Shown here piece after piece: positions 41,526 through 55,098 of a DNA stretch of 64,000 bases. The translations under genes were made by a program, and so were the position numbers. Each line of letters begins with the position of its first letter. Positions within the stretch are counted from its first letter, which is position 1. The notes under the pieces were generated by a model, which saw only the letters and a list, made by a program, of their open reading frames with translations, did not search any database and was not told the DNA's origin. The stretch spans positions 168,029 through 232,028 of IMG/VR virus record IMGVR_UViG_3300030329_004647; one strand, 5' to 3'.

Positions 41526-41987
41526 ATGCCATCAAAAAGATTTGGAATAGCGTTCCCATTTTCAGATAGTCCAGACGGATTATTTTTGAAAACTACTAAA
41601 ACACCTTCAGAAGAATTACGTGCTAATTTTATTCATTTAATACTTACTAAAAAAGGTAGTAGATATTTTTTACCTGATTTTGGGACGAGATTAATGGAAT
41701 ATGTTTTCGACCAATTGGATGAACCTACACTCAAGGCTATAGAATCAGAACTACAAGATGCGGTAGATAAGTACCTACCAAACCTACAAATTTTAGGTAT
41801 ACACGTTACCATTTTAAAAGACGCTAACGACGCAGAACTAAATCCAGTAATAAATAGTGATGAAGATGCTAGAGTTTTTAGAGTAGCTGGAACATCTGCT
41901 CAGGAACACACAGCTAAAATTAGAATAGAATATACTTTAAAAGATAATGTTTTTCAAACTAAAGACTTTGTAATTATTAATATATAA
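41526..41987 (+). CDS. Baseplate wedge protein (T4 gp25/GPW-like)
   Basis: FGIAFPF...HLILTKKGSRYFLPDFGTRLMEYVFD. Confidence 0.9.
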   Translation: MPSKRFGIAFPFSDSPDGLFLKTTKTPSEELRANFIHLILTKKGSRYFLPDFGTRLMEYVFDQLDEPTLKAIESELQDAVDKYLPNLQILGIHVTILKDANDAELNPVINSDEDARVFRVAGTSAQEHTAKIRIEYTLKDNVFQTKDFVIINI

Positions 41988-41988
41988 T

Positions 41989-43827
41989 ATGGCACAGAAA
42001 AAAATATCATATACGGAAAGAGATTTTTTGGGTCTAAGGAATGAACTTCTAAGACTAACAAATATCTATTACCCTGATTTAATTCAAGACGCGAGTGACG
42101 CTTCTATATATTCTTTATTTCTAGATTTAAATGCGGCGGTAGCAGACAATTTACACTATAGTATTGATAGAAGTTTACAAGAAACGGTTTTACAATTTGC
42201 CCAGGAAAGAAGTTCTTTATATAATATAGCTAGAACTTATGGTTTAAAAATACCAGGCAAAAGACCATCTGTTGCTTTATGTGACTTATCGGTTATTGTA
42301 CCAGCCAGAGGAGACCAAGAAGATACTAGATATCTTGGATTATTAAAAAGTGGTTCACAATTTAGAGGAGCGGGACAAGTTTTCGAACTTGTAAACGACT
42401 GTGATTTTTCTTCCCAATATTCCGTAGACGGTACACCTAATAGAACAAAAATACCTAATTTAGACGCTAACGGGATAATTGTTAATTATACCATTACAAA
42501 AAGAGAACCGGTAGTTAACGGAGTTACAAGAATCTTTAAAAAAGAAATAAGAGATATTGATTCTAAACCATTCTTTAAACTATTTCTTCCAGAAAGAAAT
42601 GTGTTAGGAGTTACAAATGTGATATATAAAGAGGGTACAAACTTCCAGTCTTTACCTTCTGGTTTAGAATTCATCAACTCACCTAACAAGTATTATGAAA
42701 TGCAGGCTCTTGCGGAACAAGATGTTTTTATTATAAATCCATCGATGCCTGCGGATGATGCTGGACTAAAAGTCGGTAACTATATCCAAACAGATAATAG
42801 GTTTATTACAGAACATACACCTGAAGGTTACTTCTTTTTAACTTTTGGTGGTGGTAATAATACACCACAAGAGTTATTGGACGATTTTAGTAGGTATGGA
42901 ATGCCTTTAGATTTAAATAGATTTATGAATACAGCCTCTATGGGTACCGCTGTTAGACCTAACACTACTATTTTTGTACAATATAGAGTTGGTGGTGGTA
43001 CCACATCCAATGTTGGTGCTGGAGCTATAAATTCTGTAGGTGTAATAGATTTTGTGGTTTATGGCCCAAATACAACTCAAAATAATAGAGTCATAAATAG
43101 TTTAGCTGTAAACAATGTTACAGCAGCTGTAGGTGGAGCAGACCAAATGACAGAAGAAGAAGTTAGAAATTACGTTTCTTTTAATTTTGCTGGACAAAAT
43201 AGAGCGGTAACTATTAATGATTATGTAAATAAAATCAGAACAATGCCTGCAGTATTTGGAGCTGCTGCTAAAGTAGGTGTTACTGAGATTGAAAATAAAG
43301 TTAAAATAGATATTTTATCATATAACCCAGATGGTACACTAACCTCTAATGTTAGTAATACACTTAAAAGTAATATAGTAACGTATCTATCCAACTATAG
43401 AATGTTAAATGATTATATAGAAATTGCTTCTGGTAATGTAATCGATTTAGCTTTTGAGGTTGATTTAATTATTGAACAAGGAGTAAATCAGTCTGAAATA
43501 ATAACTAATGTCATAACTAAAGTAGGTGATTACTTTGGTGTGAGTAAAGTTGAAATGGGAGCGCCTGTTAATATGGGTAACCTAAGAAGACAGATAATGG
43601 AACAACCAGGAGTAATAAACATAGTAGATATTAAAGTATTTAATAAGGTGGGTAATGGATACTCAAGCAGTGAAATTAGTCAAGCATATGTAGACCCAGA
43701 AACTAAACAAATAGCTTTAATTGACGAGACTATTTTTCTACAACCAAACGAGATAGCAGCCATCCGAGTACCGCAAGTAGACATCAACGTTAGATTTAAA
43801 CAACCTAGCCAACCTATAATATATTAG
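41989..43827 (+). CDS. Baseplate wedge protein (T4 gp6/baseplate J-like)
   Basis: ISYTERDFLGLRNEL...AQERSSLYNIARTYGLK...YRVGGG...GGADQ...QNRAVTINDY. Confidence 0.9.
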   Translation: MAQKKISYTERDFLGLRNELLRLTNIYYPDLIQDASDASIYSLFLDLNAAVADNLHYSIDRSLQETVLQFAQERSSLYNIARTYGLKIPGKRPSVALCDLSVIVPARGDQEDTRYLGLLKSGSQFRGAGQVFELVNDCDFSSQYSVDGTPNRTKIPNLDANGIIVNYTITKREPVVNGVTRIFKKEIRDIDSKPFFKLFLPERNVLGVTNVIYKEGTNFQSLPSGLEFINSPNKYYEMQALAEQDVFIINPSMPADDAGLKVGNYIQTDNRFITEHTPEGYFFLTFGGGNNTPQELLDDFSRYGMPLDLNRFMNTASMGTAVRPNTTIFVQYRVGGGTTSNVGAGAINSVGVIDFVVYGPNTTQNNRVINSLAVNNVTAAVGGADQMTEEEVRNYVSFNFAGQNRAVTINDYVNKIRTMPAVFGAAAKVGVTEIENKVKIDILSYNPDGTLTSNVSNTLKSNIVTYLSNYRMLNDYIEIASGNVIDLAFEVDLIIEQGVNQSEIITNVITKVGDYFGVSKVEMGAPVNMGNLRRQIMEQPGVINIVDIKVFNKVGNGYSSSEISQAYVDPETKQIALIDETIFLQPNEIAAIRVPQVDINVRFKQPSQPIIY

Positions 43828-43899: not shown

Positions 43900-46800
43900 A
43901 TGCCTAGGAATATAAGAATTAGAACAAAAATTGGGGTAGACAAGGAAGTTAAGGTAAACCTCGACCAAGATTTTGATAGATTGGAGATATTAAGTTTGAA
44001 TCTCCATCAGTCTGACACATACAGAAGAGATTGTGCAGATTTTGGTGTTATAGCTGGTAGAGTTGTAACAAATGGAGGGTTTGGAGTACCAAATGCAAAG
44101 GTAGCTGTGTTTGTACCTTTAGACAATGAAGACGAAAGTAATCCAGTAATATCACAATTATATCCTTATAAAAGAACCAGTTTTAGAAACGAAGAAGGTT
44201 ATAGTTATAATCTACTATCCTCAACACCAAACTACGAAGGACACAAAGCAACTGGAACCTTCCCGACAAGAAGAGAAGTACTACTTAATCAAGATGTAGA
44301 GTACGTTTATAAAAAATACTATAAATTCACAGTTAAAACCAATCCAAGTGGTGATTATATGTTATATGGTATTCCTCCAGGAAACCAAACATTAATAATG
44401 AATTTAGATTTAAGTGACATGGGTTGTTTTTCATTAACACCAGAAGACTTAAAAAGAATGGGGAAACCTGAAGCACAATTTGATGGTGCGGATTTTATGA
44501 GTGGAACAACACTAGAAACTTTACCACAAATAGTATCACAAGCTAAGGTAATTGAAGTTAGACCATTTTGGGGTGATGACGAAGCTTGTAACGCTGCAAT
44601 AACAAGAGTAGATTTTGATTTAAGAGATTCTAGTATAGAAATAAAACCTGTAGCGGTTTTTATGGGGTCCTCAGCTAGTGATGATGGTAAAAACTCTGTT
44701 AATAAAAACTGTATTCCTAGAAGAAGACAAGGTAATTTATGTGAGCTAGTTACCGGACCAGGTGATATAGAATCTATAAGACACACAATAGCTTATACTA
44801 CTGGGGGTACGATAAACGCACCCCAAGTAACCCCAATTTTACAAAGAAAAGATTATCCTGGAGCTTTAGATGGGGATGGAGCTTTTTTAATAAATGTTCC
44901 TATGAATATGGACTATGTTTATACTAATGAATTTGGTGAACAAGTTTTAAGTCCAGACCCAAAAGTAGGGATACCAACAAAATCTAAAAGTAGATTTAGA
45001 ATTAAATTTTCACAAGATGGGTCAGGATTTAGATTAAGAAAACGTGGAGAATACTTATTACCTAATATTAAAGAGTACAACGCTATACCTGCCGATGCTG
45101 GAGAAAATGTTGTTAATGGTAATATTACAATAGAAGAAGCTTCATATTCATTTTCTACAGACATAGAAAACTATGCGTCTAAATACGATGTTTTAGCTAC
45201 TAATGATTATTTTTATACCTTTCGGTATAATAGAGTATACACCCCATCTTTATATTTACACAAACATAGAGACAGTATAAATATTTTAGGTTTTATACCT
45301 TTCGGTAATAACAAACATAGGTTTGTGGGTATAAAATCTATTAAACCAGACCCTAAAGACGCTTGTACAGATATTGTTACTGAGTTTCCAGCAAATGATG
45401 CGTATAGGGACACTAATTTGATGTTTATAATTGCACAACTAATGTTCATTTTTATGCAAATTATTTTTATAGTCTTATTTTTATATTTGGGTTATATCAC
45501 TATTAGTTGGTTATTAGCTTTTGCTGCAGGTATAGGTTCAGAAGTTTATTTTGGTACTTTACTAGGTGGTATTATGGCTTACGCGATTAATTCTATAGCT
45601 AGAGGGTTTGATGTTAATTTACCATTAACTAAGTATTCAGAATGTGAGTCGTGTGATTGTGGTGGTAATCCATTTTTCGACTTTAATCTTGGAGCGTTTA
45701 GTATGAGTTACGCCGCGTCAAGTGTGTCGATGCCTTCCGTAGACTCCTCATTTGTAGGGTCTAGTTTTTCTGCTCCACCAGGTCAATCAGGAAGTGCAGC
45801 CGCCGGGGGACCAACACCTAATGTAAGTTTAACCGCACCAACCAACGCAGAGGCAAACTGCGCAGATTTGGTACATTTACCAGCTGGAAACTGTAACGCT
45901 TGTGCTGGTGGGCTAAACACAAATTTCTATGATAACGGATGTTATCAACTATCTTTTGGTAATTACGGAATTATTAACACTGCTGGTAACGCGATAAATG
46001 GAACAATTGTAGCTATAACAGTAGCACTTGCACTTTATATATTTCTTTGTATTGTAGGTACAGTAGGTAGTTTTGGTACAGCTGGACCCATTATTTGTCA
46101 AGGTTTAAATTTCATAGTAGGACTAGTTACAATATTACTTTATATAGCTATTATAACTTTATTTGCTGGGTTTTTAATTGCGATATTCACTGGTACAGGA
46201 GGATGCAACAGTATTGTCCACCTAAGTAGTTTTTGGAGAGCTAGAAAAACAGTATATCAAGCACTATGTGGTGGGATAATTAATCAAATATTTGCTAATA
46301 ATTGGATACACGGATTTCTATACCACTTTCAATTTAAAGCTAAAACTATAACAGATGCTCAGGCAGCTAGTTTAAATTGGATACCTTTTGGCTGGGCTCC
46401 ACAAGCGGGGACTAAATTCTGTGAATCAGTAGTGTATCTATCCGATAAACAAAAAAAATATTATTATAGGAGTTCTAAATGGGCACCAGGAGCTAATTAT
46501 CCACAAGGAACGTTTAATAAATTAAGGTTTTCCACAACTGTAAGTGAAATAGGATTGACTAAAGGTTATTTATTAGACACATGTAACGACTTATCTATTT
46601 GTGATGATTGTTATGTATTACCAAAAATGGGGTCCACCTCAGCTCAAGATAATGATGATTTATTAGAATATATAGCCAATTCAAGGTACCAATGGGAAAT
46701 TGAAGATATTAATAACCCTTATTTCCTAGGGAGCGTTACCATTAGAAATTTATTCTTCAATATTAGAAATAACAGCAAAGTAGACGGTGATATAGCTCAA

Positions 46801-47406
46801 GCTATTTCACAAAACAATGAATTTGGAATGGCTCAGTTCGTTTCACCTGATGAACCAGGAAACTCACTCTCAAACCCAGGTTCACTTACAAACTTTGAAG
46901 TTGCTTTAACTAACCCATACTATTTTGAATTACTAGACTCATCTCAATGTCAAACACCGAATAGTGTTGGGTTTACAGGTCCTGAAGGTACCATAGATAC
47001 TAATGGTGGTGTTGTTACTATTCCATTCGCTGTAGAAGGTCCTGAAACAAGAGATTGTTTATTAGGAAAAGCAGATGGGTTTGATTGGAGTCAAGATACA
47101 TATTGGGGACATTGGTCAACAGCTGGTGGAGCTGGTGGATGGGGTGATAGAGGTAATGATTATTCATTAACATCTAATGATGGTGTACAAGCACCAGGGG
47201 GTATAACACAATTTGTTAGTCAACCAGGATACCAATATTCTCCTAACACTTTACCACCTATTGGACCAACAACCGCTGATGACATGAGAATAGCTAGACA
47301 TTTCCACTATTATTTCGGGCATAAAGTAGGTTTTACGTCCTATAATTTATTTGAAGAAAAGTACATAAATAAACCAGAAGATGATTTAGATTTAACAACA
47401 TTATAG
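43900..47406 (+). CDS. Large structural protein with Ig/carboxypeptidase-regulatory-like N-domain and internal hydrophobic helices
   Basis: GRVVTNGGFGVPNAKVAVFVP and VKTNPSGDYMLYGIPPGNQTL; two long hydrophobic clusters. Confidence 0.6.
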   Translation: MPRNIRIRTKIGVDKEVKVNLDQDFDRLEILSLNLHQSDTYRRDCADFGVIAGRVVTNGGFGVPNAKVAVFVPLDNEDESNPVISQLYPYKRTSFRNEEGYSYNLLSSTPNYEGHKATGTFPTRREVLLNQDVEYVYKKYYKFTVKTNPSGDYMLYGIPPGNQTLIMNLDLSDMGCFSLTPEDLKRMGKPEAQFDGADFMSGTTLETLPQIVSQAKVIEVRPFWGDDEACNAAITRVDFDLRDSSIEIKPVAVFMGSSASDDGKNSVNKNCIPRRRQGNLCELVTGPGDIESIRHTIAYTTGGTINAPQVTPILQRKDYPGALDGDGAFLINVPMNMDYVYTNEFGEQVLSPDPKVGIPTKSKSRFRIKFSQDGSGFRLRKRGEYLLPNIKEYNAIPADAGENVVNGNITIEEASYSFSTDIENYASKYDVLATNDYFYTFRYNRVYTPSLYLHKHRDSINILGFIPFGNNKHRFVGIKSIKPDPKDACTDIVTEFPANDAYRDTNLMFIIAQLMFIFMQIIFIVLFLYLGYITISWLLAFAAGIGSEVYFGTLLGGIMAYAINSIARGFDVNLPLTKYSECESCDCGGNPFFDFNLGAFSMSYAASSVSMPSVDSSFVGSSFSAPPGQSGSAAAGGPTPNVSLTAPTNAEANCADLVHLPAGNCNACAGGLNTNFYDNGCYQLSFGNYGIINTAGNAINGTIVAITVALALYIFLCIVGTVGSFGTAGPIICQGLNFIVGLVTILLYIAIITLFAGFLIAIFTGTGGCNSIVHLSSFWRARKTVYQALCGGIINQIFANNWIHGFLYHFQFKAKTITDAQAASLNWIPFGWAPQAGTKFCESVVYLSDKQKKYYYRSSKWAPGANYPQGTFNKLRFSTTVSEIGLTKGYLLDTCNDLSICDDCYVLPKMGSTSAQDNDDLLEYIANSRYQWEIEDINNPYFLGSVTIRNLFFNIRNNSKVDGDIAQAISQNNEFGMAQFVSPDEPGNSLSNPGSLTNFEVALTNPYYFELLDSSQCQTPNSVGFTGPEGTIDTNGGVVTIPFAVEGPETRDCLLGKADGFDWSQDTYWGHWSTAGGAGGWGDRGNDYSLTSNDGVQAPGGITQFVSQPGYQYSPNTLPPIGPTTADDMRIARHFHYYFGHKVGFTSYNLFEEKYINKPEDDLDLTTL

Positions 47407-49188
47407 ATGAGTTATAGTGAAGGAATAAGAATAGTAAGGGGAAGTAAACGTTTTATTGGAGGCGTTGACAAAGACGTATCGATACCATACGCTCTTGAAG
47501 CACAACAACTCAATTTAATTGAAGGCGATAGAAATAAGGTACTAGACTTAAGTGAACAGTTTTTAAGAGAAAGAGACTCGTCTTCAATATATAGATTTTA
47601 CGGTAAGATTTCACCTTTATATGAAAACTTTTTAACGGGGTGCACAGAGGACACAGTATTAATGCAACACCACATGGAGTTTACTTCTCCACACCCTAAC
47701 ACAGCTACTACTACCTGTGGATACCCATCTTTTGAGATATTTGATTTTGTACCTAGCACAGGATTTACAAACTCGTCCCTGCAAGGTTCACCCAACCCCT
47801 ATGAAGAACAATTAGCCTACCAATATAACTGGACAATTTATGAGTCTTACGTTTATAGTGCAGACACAGAAGAAAAAATGCATTGGGTAGCTCAATTTAC
47901 ACCACCAAACTACCAAATATTACAGTTTACCGCTCACGACGGAATACCTTTTACTGTTAACAATGTACAAGTAGAAGGTAAAAATTTATTAAAATGTACT
48001 TGCCCAGTAGAACATGGTTTAAATGTGGGAGAATATATACTTTTAGCAGATGGTACCACCAATAATGCAATTAATCAAAATCTAGTAACTATAATAAATG
48101 GAGACTCTTTAGTTCCAGTTTATTCTTTAGGTGATGCAACAGTAGGTTCCGATACAACTATATTTAACATCTTATTAGATGGTAGTAGTAACGTACCACC
48201 CAACTTCTCACTAGGAAATTTTAAAAGAGTTATTAACCCCGATAATTTAGAGGAAACAACCTCACAATATTATGTGCACCAACATAAATTAATAACAACA
48301 CCTAGGGATTATATTTTAGATAATTGTGCGTTTGAGTTAGGCATATATGACGCTGATAAAAAGGTTTATTGTGAACACGACTCACCACCTAACGGAATAC
48401 CACATAAAGTAACTAAACAAGAATATAGAAGTTTTTTATGGAACTTTACAAATGATTTAAACACAGCATTTTTATCTGACAATTTAAATAGACCTATAAC
48501 TGAAATATATACTAGTATTTTTGTTACCAATTACTATAATATATGGGACCAAATTACATTACTAAATTCACAACCAGCACCATACCTAGCAACAGGTTCA
48601 TCACCAGCTGGGTACGGATGGTCTTGGAATTTCCAACCAAATGGAACTCTAGATTCCTATCCAAGTAGCCACCCAACTAATCTACAAACACCAACTACAT
48701 ATCCTACAAGTGGTGACACCTTTAGAGGGGCATACGCAGAATATAATCCATCAGAAGTAAAAGAAAGAGTAGTTTCTGAAATTTATCATAAATTACAGTA
48801 CAATCTAGCTCTTATGGATATTGGAATTGAGTGGTATCCAGCTACTATGGGTGGACAATGGGACCACCCACCACCAGGATACTACTACCAACCTCATAAT
48901 AGAATGATAACTAGAAAATATTCTAACCAGATATCTACAAATCCAGATTATAACTACGCTCCGCCTTATGCTTATTATTCAGTATACGAAAATACTTTTA
49001 AGTGGAGAAATATTTTAGATTTGGGTTATTATGAATCTGAAACAAATGGGGTTAATTATCCTTTTTTAAACGGAATACAATATGTTTATAATAACATAAT
49101 GTTTAACATAAAACCATTACTTGGAGACCTAAGATTTAGAGGTGCTACAAGTCCAATAGAAATACCTGACTTTGATGACTGTCAATAG
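47407..49188 (+). CDS. Structural protein, unknown function
   Basis: 593-aa ORF in the tightly packed baseplate-distal operon. Confidence 0.65.
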   Translation: MSYSEGIRIVRGSKRFIGGVDKDVSIPYALEAQQLNLIEGDRNKVLDLSEQFLRERDSSSIYRFYGKISPLYENFLTGCTEDTVLMQHHMEFTSPHPNTATTTCGYPSFEIFDFVPSTGFTNSSLQGSPNPYEEQLAYQYNWTIYESYVYSADTEEKMHWVAQFTPPNYQILQFTAHDGIPFTVNNVQVEGKNLLKCTCPVEHGLNVGEYILLADGTTNNAINQNLVTIINGDSLVPVYSLGDATVGSDTTIFNILLDGSSNVPPNFSLGNFKRVINPDNLEETTSQYYVHQHKLITTPRDYILDNCAFELGIYDADKKVYCEHDSPPNGIPHKVTKQEYRSFLWNFTNDLNTAFLSDNLNRPITEIYTSIFVTNYYNIWDQITLLNSQPAPYLATGSSPAGYGWSWNFQPNGTLDSYPSSHPTNLQTPTTYPTSGDTFRGAYAEYNPSEVKERVVSEIYHKLQYNLALMDIGIEWYPATMGGQWDHPPPGYYYQPHNRMITRKYSNQISTNPDYNYAPPYAYYSVYENTFKWRNILDLGYYESETNGVNYPFLNGIQYVYNNIMFNIKPLLGDLRFRGATSPIEIPDFDDCQ

Positions 49189-50107
49189 AATTAAAATATT
49201 AAGAAAAGATTTAGAACAAAACGACAAAAGAATTGTAGTGCCTTTTGCAACTGATTTTGATGAAGTAGGGAGAAATCAATTAGTGCAATTGTATGAAGAT
49301 TCTGAAATGCAAGATGCGATAAATTATATACAAGATTTTGAAACAGTAAGATATTCTCATGAGGAAACCCTTAATAATGCTGACAACAGTCATATATTTT
49401 ACGATATGAATTTTATAACAACTATTGGGGGTTTAGATTATACTAATTCTTATTCAGCGATGGACATATCAAATCAAGATGTAAGAGACGCACAAAACAG
49501 TTTTACTAAAAGTTTTTTTAAGTTTGATTTTTATAATACACCTAACAGGTCACAACAAAGACTTATGTTTTCTACAATTATGCCTTGCGACGCATCCAAA
49601 AAAGTTGAAGTTCCTATATCGAGTGACCCAAACGACATTAATTTTGACCCATTTGCCTATATCAACGCTATCTCATTAGACCCTACAAACGCCAATCCAA
49701 CCTATCTAATCAATCAAGCGTTATTTGATTTAGGGCCTCATAGAACTAATAACGAAAATTATTATCTTCATTGGTTAAAAGGAACCAATATATTTGATAG
49801 TGTAGAATTTTATATGTCTTGTACTTTCTTTAATGCACAAACAGGTGAATTTTATCCATTACTAACAACACACCAGTTTGATTTTAACGGAAACCTCACC
49901 CCAATGAATGATATATACACTTTTAATTTTGCGGATTGGAGATATTATAAAGTAACATTAGATAGAAATCATTTAGGTCAAAATGCTGATTATAGAAAAT
50001 ATACTTACAAAGTAGAAGAATATAATGAATCACAAGGAGGAGTTGGTAATAGAGTGGGAACCACCAGTGCCAATCCGATAAAGTTTTTTGAATACCAAAG
50101 CCCATAA
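49175..50107 (+). CDS. Structural protein, unknown function
   Basis: ATG 49175 overlaps the upstream stop; contains FTKSFFKFDFYNTP. Confidence 0.65.
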   Translation: MTVNRIKILRKDLEQNDKRIVVPFATDFDEVGRNQLVQLYEDSEMQDAINYIQDFETVRYSHEETLNNADNSHIFYDMNFITTIGGLDYTNSYSAMDISNQDVRDAQNSFTKSFFKFDFYNTPNRSQQRLMFSTIMPCDASKKVEVPISSDPNDINFDPFAYINAISLDPTNANPTYLINQALFDLGPHRTNNENYYLHWLKGTNIFDSVEFYMSCTFFNAQTGEFYPLLTTHQFDFNGNLTPMNDIYTFNFADWRYYKVTLDRNHLGQNADYRKYTYKVEEYNESQGGVGNRVGTTSANPIKFFEYQSP

Positions 50108-52728
50108 TGGACATTTATAAATACAGAGTACTCACAGGTAATATACCAGGCAAATACACTCCATTTCCTTGTGGAGATGTAATATATGGGTGTACAGATA
50201 CTGACGCGGTAAACTTTAACCCAGCGGCTACTGTCAATCAAGTTTCAGAAACTAATACCGCTAATCCCTGTACGTATACAGTTAATTTAAGTGGTATGTG
50301 TTGTGGGACTTGTTTAGACTGTTTTGACTTTACAGGTGATGGTGTTATTAGTGTAGGTGATTTAAATGTGTTTCTACAATACTATTATACAGTACAACCA
50401 GACTGTACAAATGGTGATGCTACAAATAGTGGTTATGTTAATGAAGAAGACTTAAATATATTTTTACAATGTTGGAATTTAACTAATAATCCTATAGATT
50501 GTCAAACCACTTTTGCTGGTCAACCAGATGCTATTCAGGCTTGTTTAGATGCAAATAGTGTAAGTGAAATCCCACAAGAAGAAGAAAAAGAATATTTGGT
50601 ACAAGTTTACCTAGACCAAGATTTTAATGATATAGGTCATTACTCACTTACAGATGGTAAAATACAACATAAAAGTGACTTTTCAAATTTTGCCGTATTT
50701 TGTGATGATACAAACCCAAATATGGTTACAGTTGAAAACTCAACAAATTTTAATTTATGGGCAGACACACAAAACTATGAATATACGATAGAATGGGGTG
50801 ACGGAACAACAACTGTCGCACAATACCCAACTATACTAAATAGTCATACGTATAATCCACCACCACCCGCATTTACTGGAACCTATGAGATTAACATTAC
50901 AATGGTAACCAACTGGAGTACTTTATCTGTAACACAAACTCACGCTATACCATGTGAGACACCAGATATAACTGGTAGTAATATAACTCAAACCTACCAA
51001 TTTACTCCATTAGGTGGAGCTCCAATAAGTTTAGATTGGTATAACACAAGTTGGGGTCCACTAGATAGTGGATTTTATGCAGAGGACTATATAACAGGTA
51101 ATTATACTACAACACCATTTATCATTACAGGTATAACTGATAGTGTGCTAAGTAATTTCCAAACTTATTCCCAAGCTCCATCTAATAACGCATATTTACC
51201 TAACGGTTATTTTGTAGGACCTAATTTTTTAGTTCCTTTTGGTGGTGAAGTCGCTATAGATAATGGTGGGGTTACAATATATGAAGATGGATTAGTAGGA
51301 TATATAATGAATGCAACACCAAACTATACAGCATATACCATAAGTGATGGTACAGGACAAAATGGTGGAATTGTACTAACCGACCAAATGATAGATGGAG
51401 AGTTAATTACAATTTATGAAGCGACTAGTGAAGGATTAAATCTACAAAATATGGGTTGGAAATATTGTTATAAACCTTGTGATGATTGTATGGGGCCACA
51501 AATGTGGATTAATGGTCAGATGGTTAACGTAAGTATTGAAGCGGGAGAATGGGATGAAAATGTATTATATAGTCAAGGTTCACTCGTAACATCTAAAGGG
51601 TGTTGTTATTTTAATTATGATACTGCTCAAGGTCAAAGTAATAATACTTCCAATACAGACATCTGGCAACCTTGTCCATCACAACCAAGCACATGTACTT
51701 CAGTTTTAGTTTGTGAATGTCAGGGATGGACAATCCAATATGGAGCAAGTCCACTCGCTACCATGTGTCAGGAATTTGACGCATTACAAGCTGCTGGATT
51801 TGGTTACCCAGCGGGGTCTATAGTTGAATTTCCAGTTGGTAGTGGTGTGTACTATTGGAACGTCATAGCTGAAGCTAACACCCCACCAAACGGTACTTGG
51901 GAATTGTGTGATGCTCCAGTTAACAGTCCTATAGTGGTAGAATTAAATTTAGAGTGTTGTGATTTAGTAGCAGAAGTAACCAATGGTATAGCACCATTTG
52001 AGTACACCTTTACGGATAATTTCAATAGTGGCGCTATTATAGTACAAGTACCAGGTGTATATAACACAACTCAAATGTTACAACAAAATTTATTTGCACC
52101 AGGACCAACTAATTTTTTAGTAGGTCAAAACATTACTGTTACTGTTACAGATTCACAAGGAAACACGTCGACTGATTCTATTAGTATAGCTGGATTACAA
52201 TGGGACCAAACAGGTAGTGTGATGTATCCACCAACAAATCAACAAGGAAATCAAGGTGGGTATACCGCACTTTTAACAGGGGGTGTATTTGATATTAATT
52301 GTGCACCAATATCTTTCTACTGGGCAGTATATCCACCTGCACAAGGAACTCCACCGACAACTACTTTTAACTACTCTACACAAGAAATATATATTGGATG
52401 GCACCCAACACAACAACCTAATGGTTTATTAGTGCCAGGACAGTACAATCTTAGAGTTGTAGATAGTTGTGGGACTAATATTGACGTGACCTTCATGGTT
52501 CCAAATATACCAAGTCCACCAGGGCCACAACAACAATATATTTTATACGATAACAATTGTCTGCCTTACTCATCACCTTTTGCTCAACAGTATATAGCTA
52601 ATGGTGGGGTTATATTTGATAGTCTACAAGCGTGTCAAGCTAATATTAGTCAAACACCACCACCTCCACCACCACAAAACGGTGCTGGCTGGTCACCCAA
52701 TAATCAAGGAAACTTATATAATACTTAA
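50107..52728 (+). CDS. Multidomain appendage protein (dockerin-like Ca-binding pair, PKD, CBM-like modules, SprB-like repeat)
   Basis: GCTDTDAVNFNPAAT; DFTGDGVISVGDL and DATNSGYVNEEDL; YTIEWGDGT; YPAGSIVEFPVGSGVYYW; AEVTNGIAPFEYTF. Confidence 0.65.
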   Translation: MDIYKYRVLTGNIPGKYTPFPCGDVIYGCTDTDAVNFNPAATVNQVSETNTANPCTYTVNLSGMCCGTCLDCFDFTGDGVISVGDLNVFLQYYYTVQPDCTNGDATNSGYVNEEDLNIFLQCWNLTNNPIDCQTTFAGQPDAIQACLDANSVSEIPQEEEKEYLVQVYLDQDFNDIGHYSLTDGKIQHKSDFSNFAVFCDDTNPNMVTVENSTNFNLWADTQNYEYTIEWGDGTTTVAQYPTILNSHTYNPPPPAFTGTYEINITMVTNWSTLSVTQTHAIPCETPDITGSNITQTYQFTPLGGAPISLDWYNTSWGPLDSGFYAEDYITGNYTTTPFIITGITDSVLSNFQTYSQAPSNNAYLPNGYFVGPNFLVPFGGEVAIDNGGVTIYEDGLVGYIMNATPNYTAYTISDGTGQNGGIVLTDQMIDGELITIYEATSEGLNLQNMGWKYCYKPCDDCMGPQMWINGQMVNVSIEAGEWDENVLYSQGSLVTSKGCCYFNYDTAQGQSNNTSNTDIWQPCPSQPSTCTSVLVCECQGWTIQYGASPLATMCQEFDALQAAGFGYPAGSIVEFPVGSGVYYWNVIAEANTPPNGTWELCDAPVNSPIVVELNLECCDLVAEVTNGIAPFEYTFTDNFNSGAIIVQVPGVYNTTQMLQQNLFAPGPTNFLVGQNITVTVTDSQGNTSTDSISIAGLQWDQTGSVMYPPTNQQGNQGGYTALLTGGVFDINCAPISFYWAVYPPAQGTPPTTTFNYSTQEIYIGWHPTQQPNGLLVPGQYNLRVVDSCGTNIDVTFMVPNIPSPPGPQQQYILYDNNCLPYSSPFAQQYIANGGVIFDSLQACQANISQTPPPPPPQNGAGWSPNNQGNLYNT

Positions 52729-52744
52729 ATGAAAAATAATTAAA

Positions 52745-54175
52745 ATGGTAGAACCACAATTTCATATATACAAACTTTGTGACATGGATACAGGACAAGA
52801 CCCTGTTACTAACCAATATACTATGGCTAGTGCGTTCACCATGGGACACCAACACCTAGACCCACCTGGTGCACAACAATGGATTTTTGGGACATATGGT
52901 ATGGGTAGTGATAAGTGGGAAGTGGCACAAATGGGTGATGTTACTTACAACCTGTTATTTGGTCTATCTAATCCACCAAATCCTGGAGAGTTTATAAAAC
53001 TTCAAACCATGACATCCGCACAACTACCAACAGGAATTATTACCTGGCAAAATGTTGCTTACGGATACCCCGCGTATCCAGGATGTGATAACGACCCTAT
53101 AACCCAAAATCCTGATTGTTATAGTAGATGTTATCAGTACTTAGGAAAATATAGTTGTGGTGACACTATGATAGATGGGACCATTAATGAATGTTTTGGA
53201 TATGCACCAACTGGTCCTTTTCCACCAACAGCTATTATTAATGACCCAATACTTTACGTTCATTCAGTTCCAAATACACAAGCCAATCAACACATAGCGA
53301 CATGCTCAGAGTGTGCCGGTTTTGGTCCACCACCTCCACCACCACCTGTGGTTCCGTGTCCTGATGCTGCTGCACAAACCCCACCTGTTAGCACTACTTT
53401 TGTGGGTTCATGGACACTTCCAGGAACATATTATTTAGGTGATGTAGTAGAATACCCAACAAATTCGGGTGTTTATTATTGGCACAATAGCTATCCTGGA
53501 GGTTTTACATATTCGGACTTATCTGGTGGCGGGATGCAAACTTATAATCCACTTTTATTGACTCAATGGCAACCATGTGTACCAGTGGTTCCCCCACCAC
53601 CCCCACTATCAGTACCATGTACTTCAGCTCAACAACAATACCCTAATCAAACATTTTCTTTTTCAGGAGCTTGGGATTCCGTAGCGTATGCTAATGATAT
53701 TTGGTACTATAGTGCGTTTTCTATAGTAGAATTTCCTCCAGCTTCTGGAATATATTGGTGGACAGATAGTGGTAGTTCACAAGGACAACCTGATATACTT
53801 ACAAATAATAAATGGTATCTATGTGAACCAGGAGGAGGACCAGGACCACCACCAATAGCAGGATGTACAGACTCAACGGCTTTAAACTATGACCCCGCTG
53901 CAGACGGTTGTTTAGACCCTCAAGGAATTGTAGTACCGGGAGACTTTAGTTGTTGTTTATATCCACAACCTAAAGAAAAACATTGTTTACCTTATTTAGT
54001 AAAAGAAGAGTTTTTAATGAATGTTGCACAAGCACCAGAAACTCGTTCCAATGTATTTATTGAAAGAGGTAAAGCTTCTGTATTCCAAAGAGCACAACGA
54101 TTATCCGAAATTAAATCAATCGGAGATTTAGAAACTCATGGATATGGATATTATAAAATACAAAATGAAACTTAA
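52745..54175 (+). CDS. Pro-rich appendage protein with CBM-like repeats
   Basis: Poly-Pro linkers; YYLGDVVEYPTNSGVYYW and AFSIVEFPPASGIYWW; GCTDSTALNYDPAAD. Confidence 0.65.
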   Translation: MVEPQFHIYKLCDMDTGQDPVTNQYTMASAFTMGHQHLDPPGAQQWIFGTYGMGSDKWEVAQMGDVTYNLLFGLSNPPNPGEFIKLQTMTSAQLPTGIITWQNVAYGYPAYPGCDNDPITQNPDCYSRCYQYLGKYSCGDTMIDGTINECFGYAPTGPFPPTAIINDPILYVHSVPNTQANQHIATCSECAGFGPPPPPPPVVPCPDAAAQTPPVSTTFVGSWTLPGTYYLGDVVEYPTNSGVYYWHNSYPGGFTYSDLSGGGMQTYNPLLLTQWQPCVPVVPPPPPLSVPCTSAQQQYPNQTFSFSGAWDSVAYANDIWYYSAFSIVEFPPASGIYWWTDSGSSQGQPDILTNNKWYLCEPGGGPGPPPIAGCTDSTALNYDPAADGCLDPQGIVVPGDFSCCLYPQPKEKHCLPYLVKEEFLMNVAQAPETRSNVFIERGKASVFQRAQRLSEIKSIGDLETHGYGYYKIQNET

Positions 54176-54180
54176 AAAAT

Positions 54181-55098
54181 ATGGCACTAGGAACTTACGG
54201 AATTAAAAGACCAGCAGACGTATCACCAGCAGACGTGGAAATAATTGTACACTACACGTCTACTAGAGATTATACTACAAATTATACATTAAGAAAATTA
54301 AATACATCTCAAGTATTAACACCATATCTACATAATGCACAGACAGGTGGAAACGCGGGAGTTGAAATCTTGGGAGGACTATATAATTTAAAATTACCAT
54401 CTTCTGTTTTTAATAAAAAAGGATATTATACGGTATACATAAGACCTATAGAAATAAGAACCAAAATAGTAGATTGTGGTATTTTATCATCTTTACCTAA
54501 TGTTAAAGGATTGGTATTTGACATAAACCAAGTACCGTCTTCATTTATTAATAGATTTGTTAATTCAGGTCTTGTAGGATATAGAATTGAGTATTTAGGA
54601 CAAGCAGGAACTAAGATACCAAACTTTTATAGATTAGTAACATCTAATTTTTATTGTGAACCTGTACCAGCTAATTTAACTAACCCAAATCAAGTATCAC
54701 CTAGATATGTTTATACTGATGGTACCAGTAATTTAATGTTTTGTACTTTAACACCAACAAGTGCACCAACAACTAAACCAAATGCTATTCCATTTATAGG
54801 TCAACCAAACCAAGATGTTATAATAACTAATACATTCTTTAATCCTATTATTTTAGATATAGAAATGGTAGACCATGATTTTGAAACACTTGCAATTGCT
54901 CTATATGGTAACCAAACTAAATCTATGGAAGATGGAATATACACAGTATACGATTTATCTGGTAACAATAACATTTATAAACAATACAACATATTTGAGA
55001 TTAGAAATGACTTCGATAATAAACTATTTGAGGTAAGACAAGATAGAGGAACCAATATCGATTTTTCTAAAAACTTTAATAGCGTTTTAACTAGTTAA
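54181..55098 (+). CDS. Structural protein, unknown function
   Basis: 305-aa ORF in operon, starting MALGTYGIKRPADVSP. Confidence 0.7.
   Translation: MALGTYGIKRPADVSPADVEIIVHYTSTRDYTTNYTLRKLNTSQVLTPYLHNAQTGGNAGVEILGGLYNLKLPSSVFNKKGYYTVYIRPIEIRTKIVDCGILSSLPNVKGLVFDINQVPSSFINRFVNSGLVGYRIEYLGQAGTKIPNFYRLVTSNFYCEPVPANLTNPNQVSPRYVYTDGTSNLMFCTLTPTSAPTTKPNAIPFIGQPNQDVIITNTFFNPIILDIEMVDHDFETLAIALYGNQTKSMEDGIYTVYDLSGNNNIYKQYNIFEIRNDFDNKLFEVRQDRGTNIDFSKNFNSVLTS

What the first reader, a model, noticed from the sequence alone, without database searches (positions are those of the whole stretch)
50107..54175. Dockerin-like Ca-binding pair, PKD and CBM5/12-like modules in two adjacent appendage proteins
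Seen: a duplicated EF-hand-like loop at 50320-50475 (CFDFTGDGVISVGDLNVFLQYY / GDATNSGYVNEEDLNIFLQCW); a PKD-like WGDG; four aromatic modules of the form W...Y..G(S/D)(I/V)VE(F/Y)P..SG(V/I)Y(Y/W)W...W..C spread over both ORFs; a GCTD..A.N(F/Y).P.A motif in each ORF; poly-Pro linkers. Known: the duplicated Ca loop is the type-I dockerin architecture, and W/Y-rich ~40-aa modules resemble chitin-binding CBM5/12. Inference: a bacterial-adhesin-like, possibly plug-in (dockerin-cohesin) glycan-binding appendage letting virions attach to particles or capsule. The shared modules suggest the two ORFs arose from a split or duplicated gene.
Basis: partly seen in the sequence, partly recalled or inferred. 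Interest (0 to 1): 0.6.

Follow-up and report, generated by a model that had tools for sequence, protein, structure and literature searches.

The report
Modular tail-fibre pair of marine jumbo phage
Two neighbouring genes in the baseplate gene block of an uncultured ~280-kb marine phage encode mosaic tail-fibre-type proteins built from a dockerin-like calcium-loop pair, a PKD-type Ig domain, small aromatic CBM5/12-like modules and a cysteine motif shared with Bacteroidota surface proteins; this is an unusual variant of ordinary phage host-attachment proteins, and it is not a split gene.

Summary
ORF-A (50107-52728, 873 aa) and ORF-B (52745-54175, 476 aa) lie downstream of gp25-like and Baseplate-J-like genes in a T4-like myovirus structural block.

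- **Dockerin-like pair (ORF-A aa 72-124):** supported but below the family threshold. NCBIfam dockerin_GC gives E 1e-4, 22.5 bits against a cut-off of 29. An exhaustive search hits bacterial proteins that carry Pfam Dockerin_1 at the matched place. The pair occurs only in this phage's closest clade, and no cohesin was found.
- **PKD-like domain (aa 188-287):** supported at fold level.
- **Aromatic modules:** real, in two related sub-types. They resemble CBM5/12 only weakly. The best structural match of the conserved one is the wedge-binding joint domain of the cyanophage A-1(L) short tail fibre.
- **GCTD motif:** an unannotated repeat of Bacteroidota T9SS cargo proteins. It also occurs in a T9SS-tagged protein of this phage.
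- **Split-gene idea:** not supported. In 48 relatives A and B are separate genes wherever both are visible.
  - A is a fibre with a conserved N-terminal part, over 2,400 aa in many relatives.
  - B is a conserved 73-aa protein that carries a ~400-aa N-terminal display extension here.

Most likely function: multivalent surface or glycan adhesion from the baseplate periphery.

The parts
50107..52728 (+). ORF-A, 873 aa: fibre-type protein with a conserved N-terminal part and a variable C-terminal part
   Evidence: ORF. Homologues cover aa 1-50 and 165-526 only. 48 loci carry the core, in ORFs of >2,400 aa in many relatives.
50107..50172 (+). Conserved N-terminal peptide (aa 1-22, MDIYKYRVLTGNIPG...C), a putative attachment peptide
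   Evidence: M1, P14 and C22 are invariant or nearly so in A1. A related ME[IV]xK[YF]xI motif heads the ORF in all 48 relatives (29 fit the strict pattern; the rest seen by eye).
50188..50286 (+). GCTD cysteine motif, copy 1 (aa 28-60)
   Evidence: Regular expression. The exhaustive search hits multi-repeat proteins, most of those scanned carrying a T9SS sorting domain, over query aa 17-67.
50320..50478 (+). Dockerin-like duplicated Ca-loop plus helix pair (aa 72-124)
   Evidence: NCBIfam NF041540 dockerin_GC, E 1.1e-4, 22.5 bits (cut-off 29), aa 74-124. phmmer hits E 4e-8 to 1e-3 to proteins with Pfam Dockerin_1 at the matched place. The AF2 model has helices at 83-93 and 113-123, pLDDT 53-69.
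50599..51696 (+). Conserved core or 'shoulder' (aa 165-530)
   Evidence: Conserved in all homologues. AF2 pLDDT 70-97 over aa 190-530.
50668..50967 (+). PKD-type Ig-like beta-sandwich (aa 188-287, WGDG at 230)
   Evidence: Foldseek: 6aem_A and 4l9d_A PKD1 domains, TM 0.71-0.72, prob 1.0. VIA: Z 7.7-8.3 to PrtV PKD1 and the Bacteroides SGBP-B Ig domain, 27-30% id. Small homologues give borderline Pfam PKD hits.
50989..51441 (+). Beta-rich domain of unassigned fold (aa 295-445)
   Evidence: Nine predicted strands with high pLDDT. Not tested on its own, because the Ig domain filled the fold-search lists. No Atlas lead.
51523..51684 (+). A1-type aromatic module (aa 473-526), conserved at the end of the core
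   Evidence: Present in all 48 relatives. It is the only Pfam CBM_5_12 match in the genome, E 0.053, 12.3 bits. VIA: Z 6.8, rmsd 1.7 A over 51 aa to A-1(L) tail fibre 8kec_a residues 134-184. hhalign against the same residues of A-1(L) gp33 (the short tail fibre) gives P 0.011, which is why 8kec_a is read as gp33.
51697..52725 (+). Hypervariable distal part of ORF-A (aa 531-873), including an A2-type module (aa 556-601, window 51772-51909), two weak Ig-like repeats and a Pro-rich tail
   Evidence: No relatives anywhere. A2-type HMM E 1e-12. Weak Big_6/Invasin_D3 hits at aa 672-726. GC 0.39 against a window mean of 0.33.
52745..54175 (+). ORF-B, 476 aa: conserved C-terminal anchor with a lineage-specific N-terminal display extension
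   Evidence: ORF. Only aa 371-476 are conserved in orthologues. Orthologues range from 73 to 1086 aa.
52745..53326 (+). Variable N-terminal domain of ORF-B (aa 1-194), fold unknown
   Evidence: Matched only by P0023. pLDDT <50.
53393..53578 (+). A2-type aromatic module B1 (aa 217-278), flanked by poly-Pro linkers (aa 195-201 and 283-287)
   Evidence: HMM E 4e-16. pLDDT about 80. The only PDB chains reaching Z>=2 are tail-fibre, baseplate and chitin-binding domains, Z 2.0-3.1.
53657..53827 (+). A2-type aromatic module B2 (aa 305-361)
   Evidence: HMM E 2e-17. Related copies lie in the N-terminal extensions of ORF-A homologues P0006, P0007, P0009 and P0010.
53861..53956 (+). GCTD cysteine motif, copy 2 (aa 373-404)
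   Evidence: Regular expression. pLDDT 74-88. Conserved upstream of the anchor in many orthologues.
53957..54172 (+). Anchor domain (aa 405-476: CLPYLVKEEFLMNV..PETRS.VFIERGK..HGYGYYK)
   Evidence: 28 invariant columns in A2. 55-62% identical in distant relatives, where it is a stand-alone ORF of 73 aa in the one read through (open frames of 74-75 aa in all five).
41526..43827 (+). Context: gp25-like (41526-41987) and Baseplate-J/gp6-like (41989-43827) genes upstream
   Evidence: Pfam GPW_gp25 E 3e-9. Baseplate_J E 8e-6. The same order is seen in relatives.
54181..55098 (+). Context: conserved 305-aa gene directly after ORF-B
   Evidence: 71% identical in a relative whose A core is about 33% identical. 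Always follows B.

Best explanation
ORF-A and ORF-B are two distinct, separately conserved proteins of the baseplate periphery or tail fibres. They belong to an uncultured marine myovirus of roughly 280 kb, probably infecting a T9SS-bearing Bacteroidota host. Their conserved parts hold them on the virion and their variable parts carry adhesion modules.

ORF-A has this layout:
- an invariant N-terminal peptide;
- an insertion-tolerant N-region, which in this lineage holds one GCTD knot and a dockerin-like Ca-loop pair;
- a conserved 'shoulder' made of a PKD-type Ig domain, a beta-rich domain and a small aromatic joint module like the one in the wedge-binding joint of the cyanophage A-1(L) short tail fibre;
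- a hypervariable distal part with another aromatic module, Ig-like repeats and a Pro-rich tail.

ORF-B is built on a ~70-aa anchor domain that in relatives is a free-standing small protein. In this lineage its N-terminus has been extended by about 400 aa: a novel domain, two aromatic modules separated by poly-Pro linkers, and a GCTD knot.

Inferred mechanism: the linker-separated modules act as several weak binding sites for host surface polysaccharide or glycoprotein during the first, reversible adsorption step. The contiguous variable cassette (the 3' end of A plus the 5' end of B) is where host-range variation accumulates.

Shown: the gene context, the conservation pattern, module homology, the PKD fold, and dockerin-type sequence similarity. 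Inferred: virion location, which end is attached, and any binding activity.
For: **Context.** gp25-like and Baseplate-J-like genes lie just upstream. The window also holds sheath, tube, gp32, UvsX-like and DnaB-like genes. The gene order is the same in relatives.

**Conservation.**
- The ORF-A core, aa 165-526, and the N-terminal peptide are conserved, while aa 540-873 is unique.
- The core heads ORFs of >2,400 aa in many relatives.
- Only the ORF-B anchor is conserved. It is a 73-aa stand-alone ORF next to giant A genes.
- Identity to distant relatives is 55-62% for the anchor and 71% for the downstream 305-aa gene, against about 30-33% for the A core.

**Modules.**
- PKD fold.
- Dockerin-type similarity.
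- Aromatic modules.
- A1-type module against the A-1(L) short-tail-fibre joint: Z 6.8, rmsd 1.7 A. The source paper says this joint binds the wedge periphery (PMC10966104).
- The variable cassette has raised GC, 0.39-0.42 against 0.33.

**Host.** A T9SS sorting domain sits on a GCTD-repeat protein in the same record. Most of the GCTD-repeat proteins scanned carry a T9SS sorting domain.
Against: - There is no direct evidence that either protein is in the virion. No PHROG, Pfam or PDB sequence match names them.
- Both models are poor outside the core and a few modules, with mean pLDDT 55 and 44.
- No oligomer or A-B interaction test could be run.
- A conserved C-terminus with a variable N-terminus, as in ORF-B, is the reverse of the usual fibre polarity.
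- Glycan binding is inferred only from weak CBM5/12 likeness: 12.3 bits, HH probabilities 1-9%, Z about 2.
- The host assignment rests on a T9SS tag and one weak Cytophagaceae match.
Confidence: 0.6

Rival explanations
1. Plug-in appendage. The dockerin-like pair binds a cohesin-like module in a Ca-dependent way. The partner could be on another virion protein, on a phage-encoded secreted protein or on the host surface, so that the adhesin or the virion is docked non-covalently.
For: - Dockerin-type similarity with correct loop-helix duplication.
- The relative's copy also scores on the same NCBIfam model.
- The nearest bacterial hits are secreted or surface proteins with PEP-CTERM anchors or SASA esterase domains.
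Against: - No Pfam Cohesin match in the 232-kb record at E<=1.
- The segment is below both family cut-offs.
- It is present only in the window and two closely related loci (L002, L013) out of 48; other relatives have a Cys-rich segment there. It therefore cannot be the family's assembly mechanism.
- From general knowledge, many non-cellulosomal dockerin-like modules have no known cohesin partner.
- Ligand positions 3 and 5 are T/D and T/S, not the canonical D/N.
Confidence: 0.12
2. The aromatic modules are purely structural fibre 'beads' or joints. They would serve for trimer packing and baseplate contact and would not bind carbohydrate. The CBM5/12 likeness would then be a shared small beta-hairpin fold only.
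For: - The best structural match of the A1-type module is the A-1(L) short-tail-fibre joint, which binds the wedge.
- Other matches are the Pa193 tail-fibre bead and the Milano and 7-7-1 fibres.
- The A1-type module is invariant in position in all 48 relatives.
Against: - A2-type modules sit in hypervariable regions, are sporadic among relatives and are set off by poly-Pro linkers like the CBMs of glycoside hydrolases.
- The W/Y..G[DS].V.[YF]..G.Y[YW]W signature aligns in register with a Pfam-verified CBM_5_12 of E. coli ChiA, P 0.004 and 0.04.
- Chitin-binding domains are among the very few PDB chains reaching Z>=2.
Confidence: 0.3
3. The two ORFs are halves of one split gene, or recent duplicates of each other.
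For: They share the GCTD and A2-type modules, are adjacent, and are separated by only 16 nt.
Against: - A and B are separate genes in every relative where both are visible, and no fused form was seen.
- B's conserved part is an independent 73-aa ORF in relatives with a giant A.
- The conserved parts of A and B share no similarity.
- No DNA-level repeats beyond the poly-Pro runs.
- The shared modules also occur in the N-terminal extensions of other A homologues, which indicates cassette shuffling.
Confidence: 0.03

Closest known systems
Short tail fibre gp33 of Anabaena myophage A-1(L) (PDB 8KEC; PMC10966104)
   Same: - It is a fibre gene directly after the wedge genes.
- ORF-A's conserved A1-type module superposes on 8kec_a residues 134-184 (Z 6.8, rmsd 1.7 A, 51 aa, 20% id). 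gp33 has the same aromatic signature at those residues, which is why the chain is read as gp33's joint domain.
- The ORF-B module matches the same place more weakly (Z 3.1).
- PolB is also distantly related to this phage group.
   Different: - No overall sequence homology; the hhalign P is only 0.011 for the module.
- ORF-A has a PKD domain, a dockerin-like pair and a GCTD motif that gp33 lacks.
- That chain 'a' is gp33 is inferred from its length and sequence, not stated by the tool.
Type I / 'GC-type' dockerin modules (Pfam PF00404, NCBIfam NF041540), non-cellulosomal kind
   Same: - Two tandem ~22-residue segments, each a 12-residue D-x-[TDN]-x-[DSN]-G-x-[IV]-x-x-x-D loop followed by a helix.
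- The nearest library hits carry Dockerin_1 at the aligned place.
- The segment aligns column for column with the short proteins P0094 and P0096, which score 26.7-28.8 bits on NF041540.
   Different: - Below both curated cut-offs (22.5 against 29 bits; no PF00404 hit at E<=1).
- Thr at loop position 3.
- No cohesin in the record.
- It sits inside a phage baseplate-block protein; no GenBank phage record matches it by tblastn at E<=1.
CBM5/12 chitin-binding modules (Pfam PF02839), including those reported in phage adhesion devices (e.g. PMC8540738)
   Same: - About 45-60-aa modules with a W...Y..G[DS].V.[YF]..G.Y..W aromatic signature, set off by Pro-rich linkers.
- In-register alignment to the E. 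coli ChiA CBM_5_12.
- Chitinase and chitin-deacetylase CBMs are among the few structural matches.
   Different: - The Pfam score is 12.3 bits against a cut-off of 26.2, on half the model only.
- HH probabilities are 1-9%.
- Z is only 2.0-2.2.
- The modules end in a conserved W..C that CBM5/12 lacks.
- No binding data exist.
PKD domains of bacterial secreted proteases and Bacteroides surface glycan-binding proteins (4L9D, 6AEM, 7KV5-7)
   Same: - Ig-like sandwich with the WGDG signature.
- Z 7.7-8.3, TM 0.71-0.72, up to 30% identity to the SGBP-B N-terminal Ig domain.
   Different: - Pfam PKD does not reach significance on ORF-A itself.
- Z near 8 is in the range common for Ig-like folds.
T4 baseplate periphery proteins gp10/gp11/gp12
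   Same: Position in the gene order after the gp25- and gp6-like genes. The lengths of neighbouring genes loosely parallel gp7-gp12.
   Different: No sequence or fold evidence was obtained. This is a positional analogy only.

Membership tests
Dockerin (Pfam PF00404 Dockerin_1 / NCBIfam NF041540 dockerin_GC) | Score at or above the curated family cut-off | tested here: not met
   NF041540 gives 22.5 bits against a cut-off of 29, E 1.1e-4, aa 74-124. PF00404 is not listed at E<=1.
Dockerin (Pfam PF00404 Dockerin_1 / NCBIfam NF041540 dockerin_GC) | Duplicated ~22-residue segment: a 12-residue Ca loop followed by a helix, twice | tested here: met
   Loops at aa 74-86 and 104-116. Predicted helices at 83-93 and 113-123. 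The segment aligns column for column with P0094 and P0096.
Dockerin (Pfam PF00404 Dockerin_1 / NCBIfam NF041540 dockerin_GC) | Acidic or amide Ca ligands at loop positions 1, 3, 5 and 12 | tested here: inconclusive
   Loop 1 has D,T,D,D and loop 2 has D,T,S,D, read directly from the sequence. Positions 1 and 12 are canonical. Positions 3 and 5 are hydroxyl residues in part.
Dockerin (Pfam PF00404 Dockerin_1 / NCBIfam NF041540 dockerin_GC) | A cognate cohesin partner | tested here: not met
   No PF00963 match at E<=1 in the 232-kb record. The record is estimated 72% complete, and a host-encoded partner was not searchable.
Dockerin (Pfam PF00404 Dockerin_1 / NCBIfam NF041540 dockerin_GC) | Ca2+-dependent folding or binding | not testable with these tools
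   Needs ITC or CD on the expressed segment.
PKD domain (PF00801 / PF18911) | Ig-like beta-sandwich superposing on solved PKD domains | tested here: met
   4l9d and 6aem: TM 0.71-0.72, prob 1.0. Z 7.5-7.8, rmsd 2.5-2.9 over 76-80 aa.
PKD domain (PF00801 / PF18911) | Pfam score at the gathering threshold | tested here: not met
   No PKD hit on ORF-A at E<=1. Small homologues are borderline, with P0064 at 23.3 against 23.5 bits.
PKD domain (PF00801 / PF18911) | Conserved W-x-x-GDG type signature | tested here: met
   WGDG at aa 230-233. W230 and G231 are invariant or nearly so across homologues.
CBM5/12 (PF02839) | Pfam score at the gathering threshold | tested here: not met
   The single genome-wide match is 12.3 bits against 26.2, E 0.053, model positions 1-22, at ORF-A aa 481-502. 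None is listed.
CBM5/12 (PF02839) | Profile-level homology to a verified CBM_5_12 | tested here: inconclusive
   hhalign against the E. coli ChiA CBM_5_12 (39.3 bits on Pfam): A1-type P 0.0036 (prob 9%), A2-type P 0.041 (prob 1%), both in register. A profile of the four modules finds no chitinase in the PDB sequences.
CBM5/12 (PF02839) | Small three-stranded fold superposing on solved chitin-binding domains | tested here: inconclusive
   4tx8_A, 2rts and 4nz1/4nz4 give Z 2.0-2.2 over 36-41 aa. Phage fibre and baseplate segments score as well or better. The domains were not folded alone.
CBM5/12 (PF02839) | Binding to chitin, cellulose or another glycan through exposed aromatic residues | not testable with these tools
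   Needs pull-down or glycan-array experiments.
Phage tail fibre / baseplate-peripheral receptor-binding protein | Encoded in the baseplate or fibre gene block | tested here: met
   GPW_gp25 and Baseplate_J lie upstream, and synteny is conserved.
Phage tail fibre / baseplate-peripheral receptor-binding protein | Conserved attachment part plus a hypervariable distal part | tested here: met
   ORF-A: the N-terminal peptide and core are conserved and aa 540-873 is unique. ORF-B: only the anchor is conserved.
Phage tail fibre / baseplate-peripheral receptor-binding protein | Oligomeric (usually trimeric) assembly on the virion | not tested

The most novel reading that the evidence does not exclude
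The virion's dockerin-like pair and GCTD knots mediate protein-protein docking rather than glycan binding. The partners would be T9SS-displayed surface proteins of the Bacteroidota host, which carry tandem GCTD repeats, or the phage's own T9SS-secreted 1123-aa GCTD-repeat protein. This would be a cohesin/dockerin-like or homotypic 'plug-in' adsorption or superinfection-control system built from host surface-protein modules.
Probability: 0.08. Interest if true: 0.8.

Novelty: new variant of a known kind. Interest (0 to 1): 0.42.

Why it matters
- **Mosaic construction.** Mosaic receptor-binding proteins are the main determinants of phage host range, and here the mosaic is easy to read. A conserved fibre shoulder and a 73-aa anchor protein serve as platforms. 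Onto them marine jumbo phages graft cassettes such as a dockerin-like pair, CBM5/12-like modules and the GCTD knot.
- **Host clue.** The cassettes are partly shared with surface proteins that carry T9SS sorting domains. This suggests a host phylum for an uncultured, globally distributed phage seen in Tara Oceans samples.
- **Annotation gap.** The GCTD repeat has no Pfam or NCBIfam model although it occurs up to 18 times per protein.
- **Rarity.** A dockerin-type module in a phage baseplate-block protein appears rare. No GenBank phage record matches it, and the paper library returned no report of a true dockerin module in a phage tail or baseplate protein.

Tried and rejected
Searches and tests that gave nothing:
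- Pfam, PHROGs and NCBIfam on both ORFs and their neighbours gave no significant family except the sub-threshold dockerin_GC.
- PDB sequence searches were empty or chance-level. This covers ORF-B, profile A1, the four-module profile and three neighbouring genes.
- tblastn of ORF-A, the dockerin segment and the 305-aa neighbour against 50,697 GenBank phage records found no match.
- The word search restricted to ORF-B aa 205-365 found nothing.
- The Atlas feature search of ORF-A aa 288-450 found nothing. The Atlas structure search for ORF-B gave low TM only, although several CBM_5_12 clusters appeared.
- The Pfam Cohesin search of the phage's own record found nothing.
- The genome search 'relatives' is not available for a virus record.
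- The first hhalign run against all five ChiA repeats failed because MAFFT misaligned them. It was redone with the verified repeat alone.
- The host search with the phage's TonB-dependent receptor gave one weak Cytophagaceae hit.

Ideas considered and dropped:
- Split or duplicated gene: dropped.
- T4 gp10/gp11 homology: kept only as a positional analogy, because no sequence or fold link was obtained.
- SprB-type repeats in ORF-A aa 603-850: seen by eye only. The internal repeat is weak, pairwise E 0.05, and there is no Pfam support.

Not used: read laying and the look-up of sequencing runs. No genetic code other than table 11 was used.


Full report
**What is there**

The window is the 3' end (positions 168029-232028) of a 232-kb IMG/VR virus record. 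CheckV estimates the record at 72% complete, and contigs of up to ~280 kb carry the same proteins. The window encodes:
- PolB, an SNF2 helicase, a sheath-like protein, a DnaB-like helicase, ribonucleotide reductase and a Baseplate-J protein;
- a gp19-like tube protein, gp32, a UvsX/RecA-like protein, RNase H, gp25, and a 2036-aa protein ending in an M23 peptidase.

It is therefore a large T4-like myovirus. The finding's two ORFs are real: ORF-A at 50107-52728 (873 aa) and ORF-B at 52745-54175 (476 aa). They lie in one long co-directional block that starts with gp25-like (41526-41987) and gp6-like (41989-43827) genes and continues through large genes to the window's end. The same phage, with 3-9 SNPs in 7.4 kb, occurs in many marine metagenomes, including Tara Oceans projects.

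**Check of the observation**

The patterns are not chance. In all six frames of the 232-kb record, the EF-loop pattern occurs only twice, both times in ORF-A. The GCTD pattern occurs only in ORF-A, ORF-B and one further protein. Cluster representatives P0001 and P0022, used in searches and folds, each differ from the window's proteins by one residue.

**Conservation pattern**

ORF-A:
- The word search and an exhaustive HMMER search found about 25 full homologues. They share aa 1-50 (a subset of them) and aa 165-526.
- Nothing anywhere matches aa 540-873.
- A scan of IMG/VR added 45 loci.
- In all 48 loci the core, plus one aromatic module at its end, sits near the N-terminus behind a conserved ME[IV]xK[YF]-type peptide.
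- The region between that peptide and the core is 143-184 aa in most loci and about 665 aa in one clade.
- In many relatives the ORF is longer than 2,400 aa.

This is the pattern of a tail fibre: a conserved proximal part and a variable distal part.

ORF-B:
- Its orthologues share only the last ~105 aa, which is a GCTD motif plus a ~70-aa 'anchor' with 28 invariant columns.
- Their total length runs from about 215 to 1086 aa.
- In five relatives with giant A genes, the anchor lies in an open frame of only 74-75 aa. In the one read through, it is a free-standing 73-aa ORF between the giant fibre gene and the conserved 305-aa gene.
- Identity to such distant relatives is 55-62% for the anchor and 71% for the 305-aa neighbour, against about 30-33% for the A core.

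ORF-B is therefore a small conserved structural protein that has gained a ~400-aa N-terminal extension in this lineage. The 3' end of A and the 5' end of B form one contiguous hypervariable cassette. Its GC is raised, at 0.39-0.42 against a window mean of 0.33.

No relative with a fused A-B gene was seen. The conserved parts of A and B are unrelated, and no DNA repeats other than the poly-Pro codons exist. The split-gene or duplicated-gene inference is not supported. The shared modules are shuffled cassettes: A2-type module plus GCTD also occur in the long N-terminal extensions of the A homologues P0006, P0007, P0009 and P0010.

**Dockerin-like pair (ORF-A aa 72-124)**

- Pfam lists only weak EF-hand hits.
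- NCBIfam NF041540 (dockerin_GC) matches aa 74-124 over nearly its whole length, with E 1.1e-4 and 22.5 bits, below the cut-off of 29.
- The exhaustive search returns about 20 proteins matched only over aa 72-131, with library-wide E from 4e-8 to 1e-3.
- Of the ten of these that were scanned, seven carry Pfam Dockerin_1, at the matched place where checked (P0057, P0071, P0087). Several have PEP-CTERM anchors or SASA esterase domains.
- Two short hits, P0094 and P0096, align column for column with both loops and helices. They score 26.7-28.8 bits on NF041540.
- The AF2 model puts a helix after each loop, with moderate confidence.

The module is therefore of the non-cellulosomal dockerin kind, though it fails the curated thresholds. 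It exists only in the window and the two closely related loci L002 and L013. Other relatives have a Cys-rich segment there. No cohesin (PF00963) is detectable in the record. No GenBank phage record matches the segment. A plug-in role is possible but untested, and it cannot be general for this protein family.

**PKD-like domain (aa 188-287)**

The core is confidently modelled, with pLDDT 70-97. Foldseek and VIA-align place aa 188-287 on PKD1 domains (4l9d, 6aem: TM 0.71-0.72, Z 7.5-7.8). They also place it on the N-terminal Ig domain of a Bacteroides surface glycan-binding protein (Z 7.7-8.3, 27-30% identity). The top BFVD hit is a 364-aa 'PKD domain-containing protein' of an uncultured phage, E 4e-14. 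Small homologues give borderline Pfam PKD hits. The fold label is supported. The beta-rich domain at aa 295-445 remains unassigned, because the Ig domain filled every hit list.

**Aromatic modules**

- Three modules (ORF-A 556-601; ORF-B 218-278 and 306-360) are mutually related. With eight copies from relatives they form a family I call A2-type.
- The fourth module (ORF-A 471-524, A1-type) is conserved at the end of the core in all relatives and is often duplicated downstream.
- Profile-profile comparison links A1 and A2, with P 1.5e-4 over 50 columns in register.

Evidence against CBM5/12 membership is weak similarity only:
- The Pfam HMM's only match in the whole genome is the A1 module, at 12.3 bits and E 0.053 over half the model.
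- hhalign against a Pfam-verified CBM_5_12 of E. coli ChiA gives in-register alignments with P 0.0036 for A1 and 0.041 for A2, but HH probabilities of 9% and 1%.

Structural searches:
- For the ORF-B model, only aa ~220-255 and 365-410 are confident. Just four of 48,161 representative chains reach Z>=2, all on aa 209-264. Two are chitin-binding domains and two are baseplate or fibre proteins.
- A second look at Foldseek's own matches adds a chitin deacetylase's CBMs and three phage fibres, at Z 2.0-3.1.
- For ORF-A, the A1 module matches cyanophage A-1(L) tail-fibre chain 8kec_a residues 134-184, with Z 6.8 and rmsd 1.7 A over 51 residues.
- That stretch is in the joint domain of short tail fibre gp33, which the authors show binds the periphery of the wedges (PMC10966104). 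The gp33 sequence there has the same aromatic signature, and hhalign gives P 0.011.
- The Pa193 match is a fibre 'bead' (PMC11456595).

The modules therefore have a CBM5/12-like signature and a small fold that is also a recurrent structural unit of phage fibres. The conserved A1 copy is more likely structural. The linker-flanked, sporadic A2 copies are the better candidates for binding modules. Family membership is not established.

**GCTD motif**

Query aa 17-67 hits proteins with up to 18 tandem copies. Of the ten that were scanned, six carry T9SS C-terminal sorting domains, and no Pfam or NCBIfam model covers the repeat itself. The ORF-B copy is confidently modelled as a small Cys-containing knot. 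Outside the window, the same phage record encodes a 1123-aa protein with at least seven GCTD repeats and a T9SS sorting domain (E 3e-10, above the cut-off). Three genes further on it encodes a TonB-dependent receptor. This points to a Bacteroidota host. A weak Cytophagaceae match to the receptor and Salinibacter phages as the nearest cultured PolB relatives are compatible with that but do not prove it.

**Mechanism**

Best-supported reading, confidence about 0.6:
- Both proteins are baseplate-peripheral fibre or adhesin components.
- The N-terminal peptide, the core and the anchor fix them to the virion.
- The variable, linker-separated modules provide multivalent, probably low-affinity contacts with host surface polymers.
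- The variable cassette carries host-range variation.

Virion location, polarity, oligomeric state and all binding activities are inferred.

**Comparison with known systems and novelty**

Modular phage receptor-binding proteins carrying Ig/PKD and CBM-type modules are well known. Three things are unusual here:
- a dockerin-type module inside such a protein;
- a 73-aa anchor protein used as a platform for N-terminal display;
- a still unannotated repeat shared with T9SS-tagged surface proteins.

I rate this a new variant of a known kind, of moderate interest.

Noticed in passing
L012 = G000:C1:22000-34000 (outside the window); ORFs L012:4047-7418 and L012:9524-11929: The same virus record encodes a 1123-aa protein with at least seven tandem GCTD repeats and a T9SS C-terminal sorting domain (Por_Secre_tail, E 3e-10). 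It also encodes an 801-aa TonB-dependent receptor (Plug + barrel + CarbopepD_reg_2). GC is phage-like. This implies a T9SS-bearing Bacteroidota host, or a host-derived island.
   Followed up: partly
L025-L057 (IMG/VR relatives); e.g. L048:5524-12891 and L060:1474-1695: In many relatives the ORF-A homologue is a giant Cys-rich protein of >2,400 aa. In the five checked, the ORF-B homologue is reduced to an anchor-only open frame of 74-75 aa, a 73-aa ORF in the one read through.
   Followed up: yes
window 43900-47406: The 1168-aa protein in the gp7 position of the baseplate block contains two long, strongly hydrophobic stretches that look like several transmembrane helices. This was seen by eye in the translation and is unusual for a baseplate protein. 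It has no family match.
   Followed up: no
window 26885-32995: A 2036-aa protein with a C-terminal Peptidase_M23 domain (E 2e-8). It may be a tape-measure or tail-lysin type protein.
   Followed up: no
window 51697-53854: The hypervariable cassette (the 3' end of ORF-A plus the 5' end of ORF-B) has GC 0.39-0.42 against 0.33 for the window. This is partly due to Pro and Gly codons. It is the GC maximum of the window.
   Followed up: partly
window 1184-3904: PolB's nearest cultured-phage relatives are Salinibacter phages (23-25% identity) and the Nostoc/Anabaena N-1 and A-1(L) group. No GenBank phage matches the structural genes that were tested, so the lineage appears to be uncultured.
   Followed up: partly
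window 51912-52650 (ORF-A aa 603-850): Two stretches ending in G.Y/N..V.V.DS.G.. look by eye like tandem Ig-like (SprB-type) repeats. Support is weak: pairwise E 0.05, and Big_6/Invasin_D3 at E about 0.08.
   Followed up: partly
window 50107 and 47406-47407: Gene junctions in the block overlap or abut. The stop of the 311-aa ORF shares base 50107 with ORF-A's ATG, and 47406/47407 abut. This suggests translational coupling through the baseplate operon.
   Followed up: no
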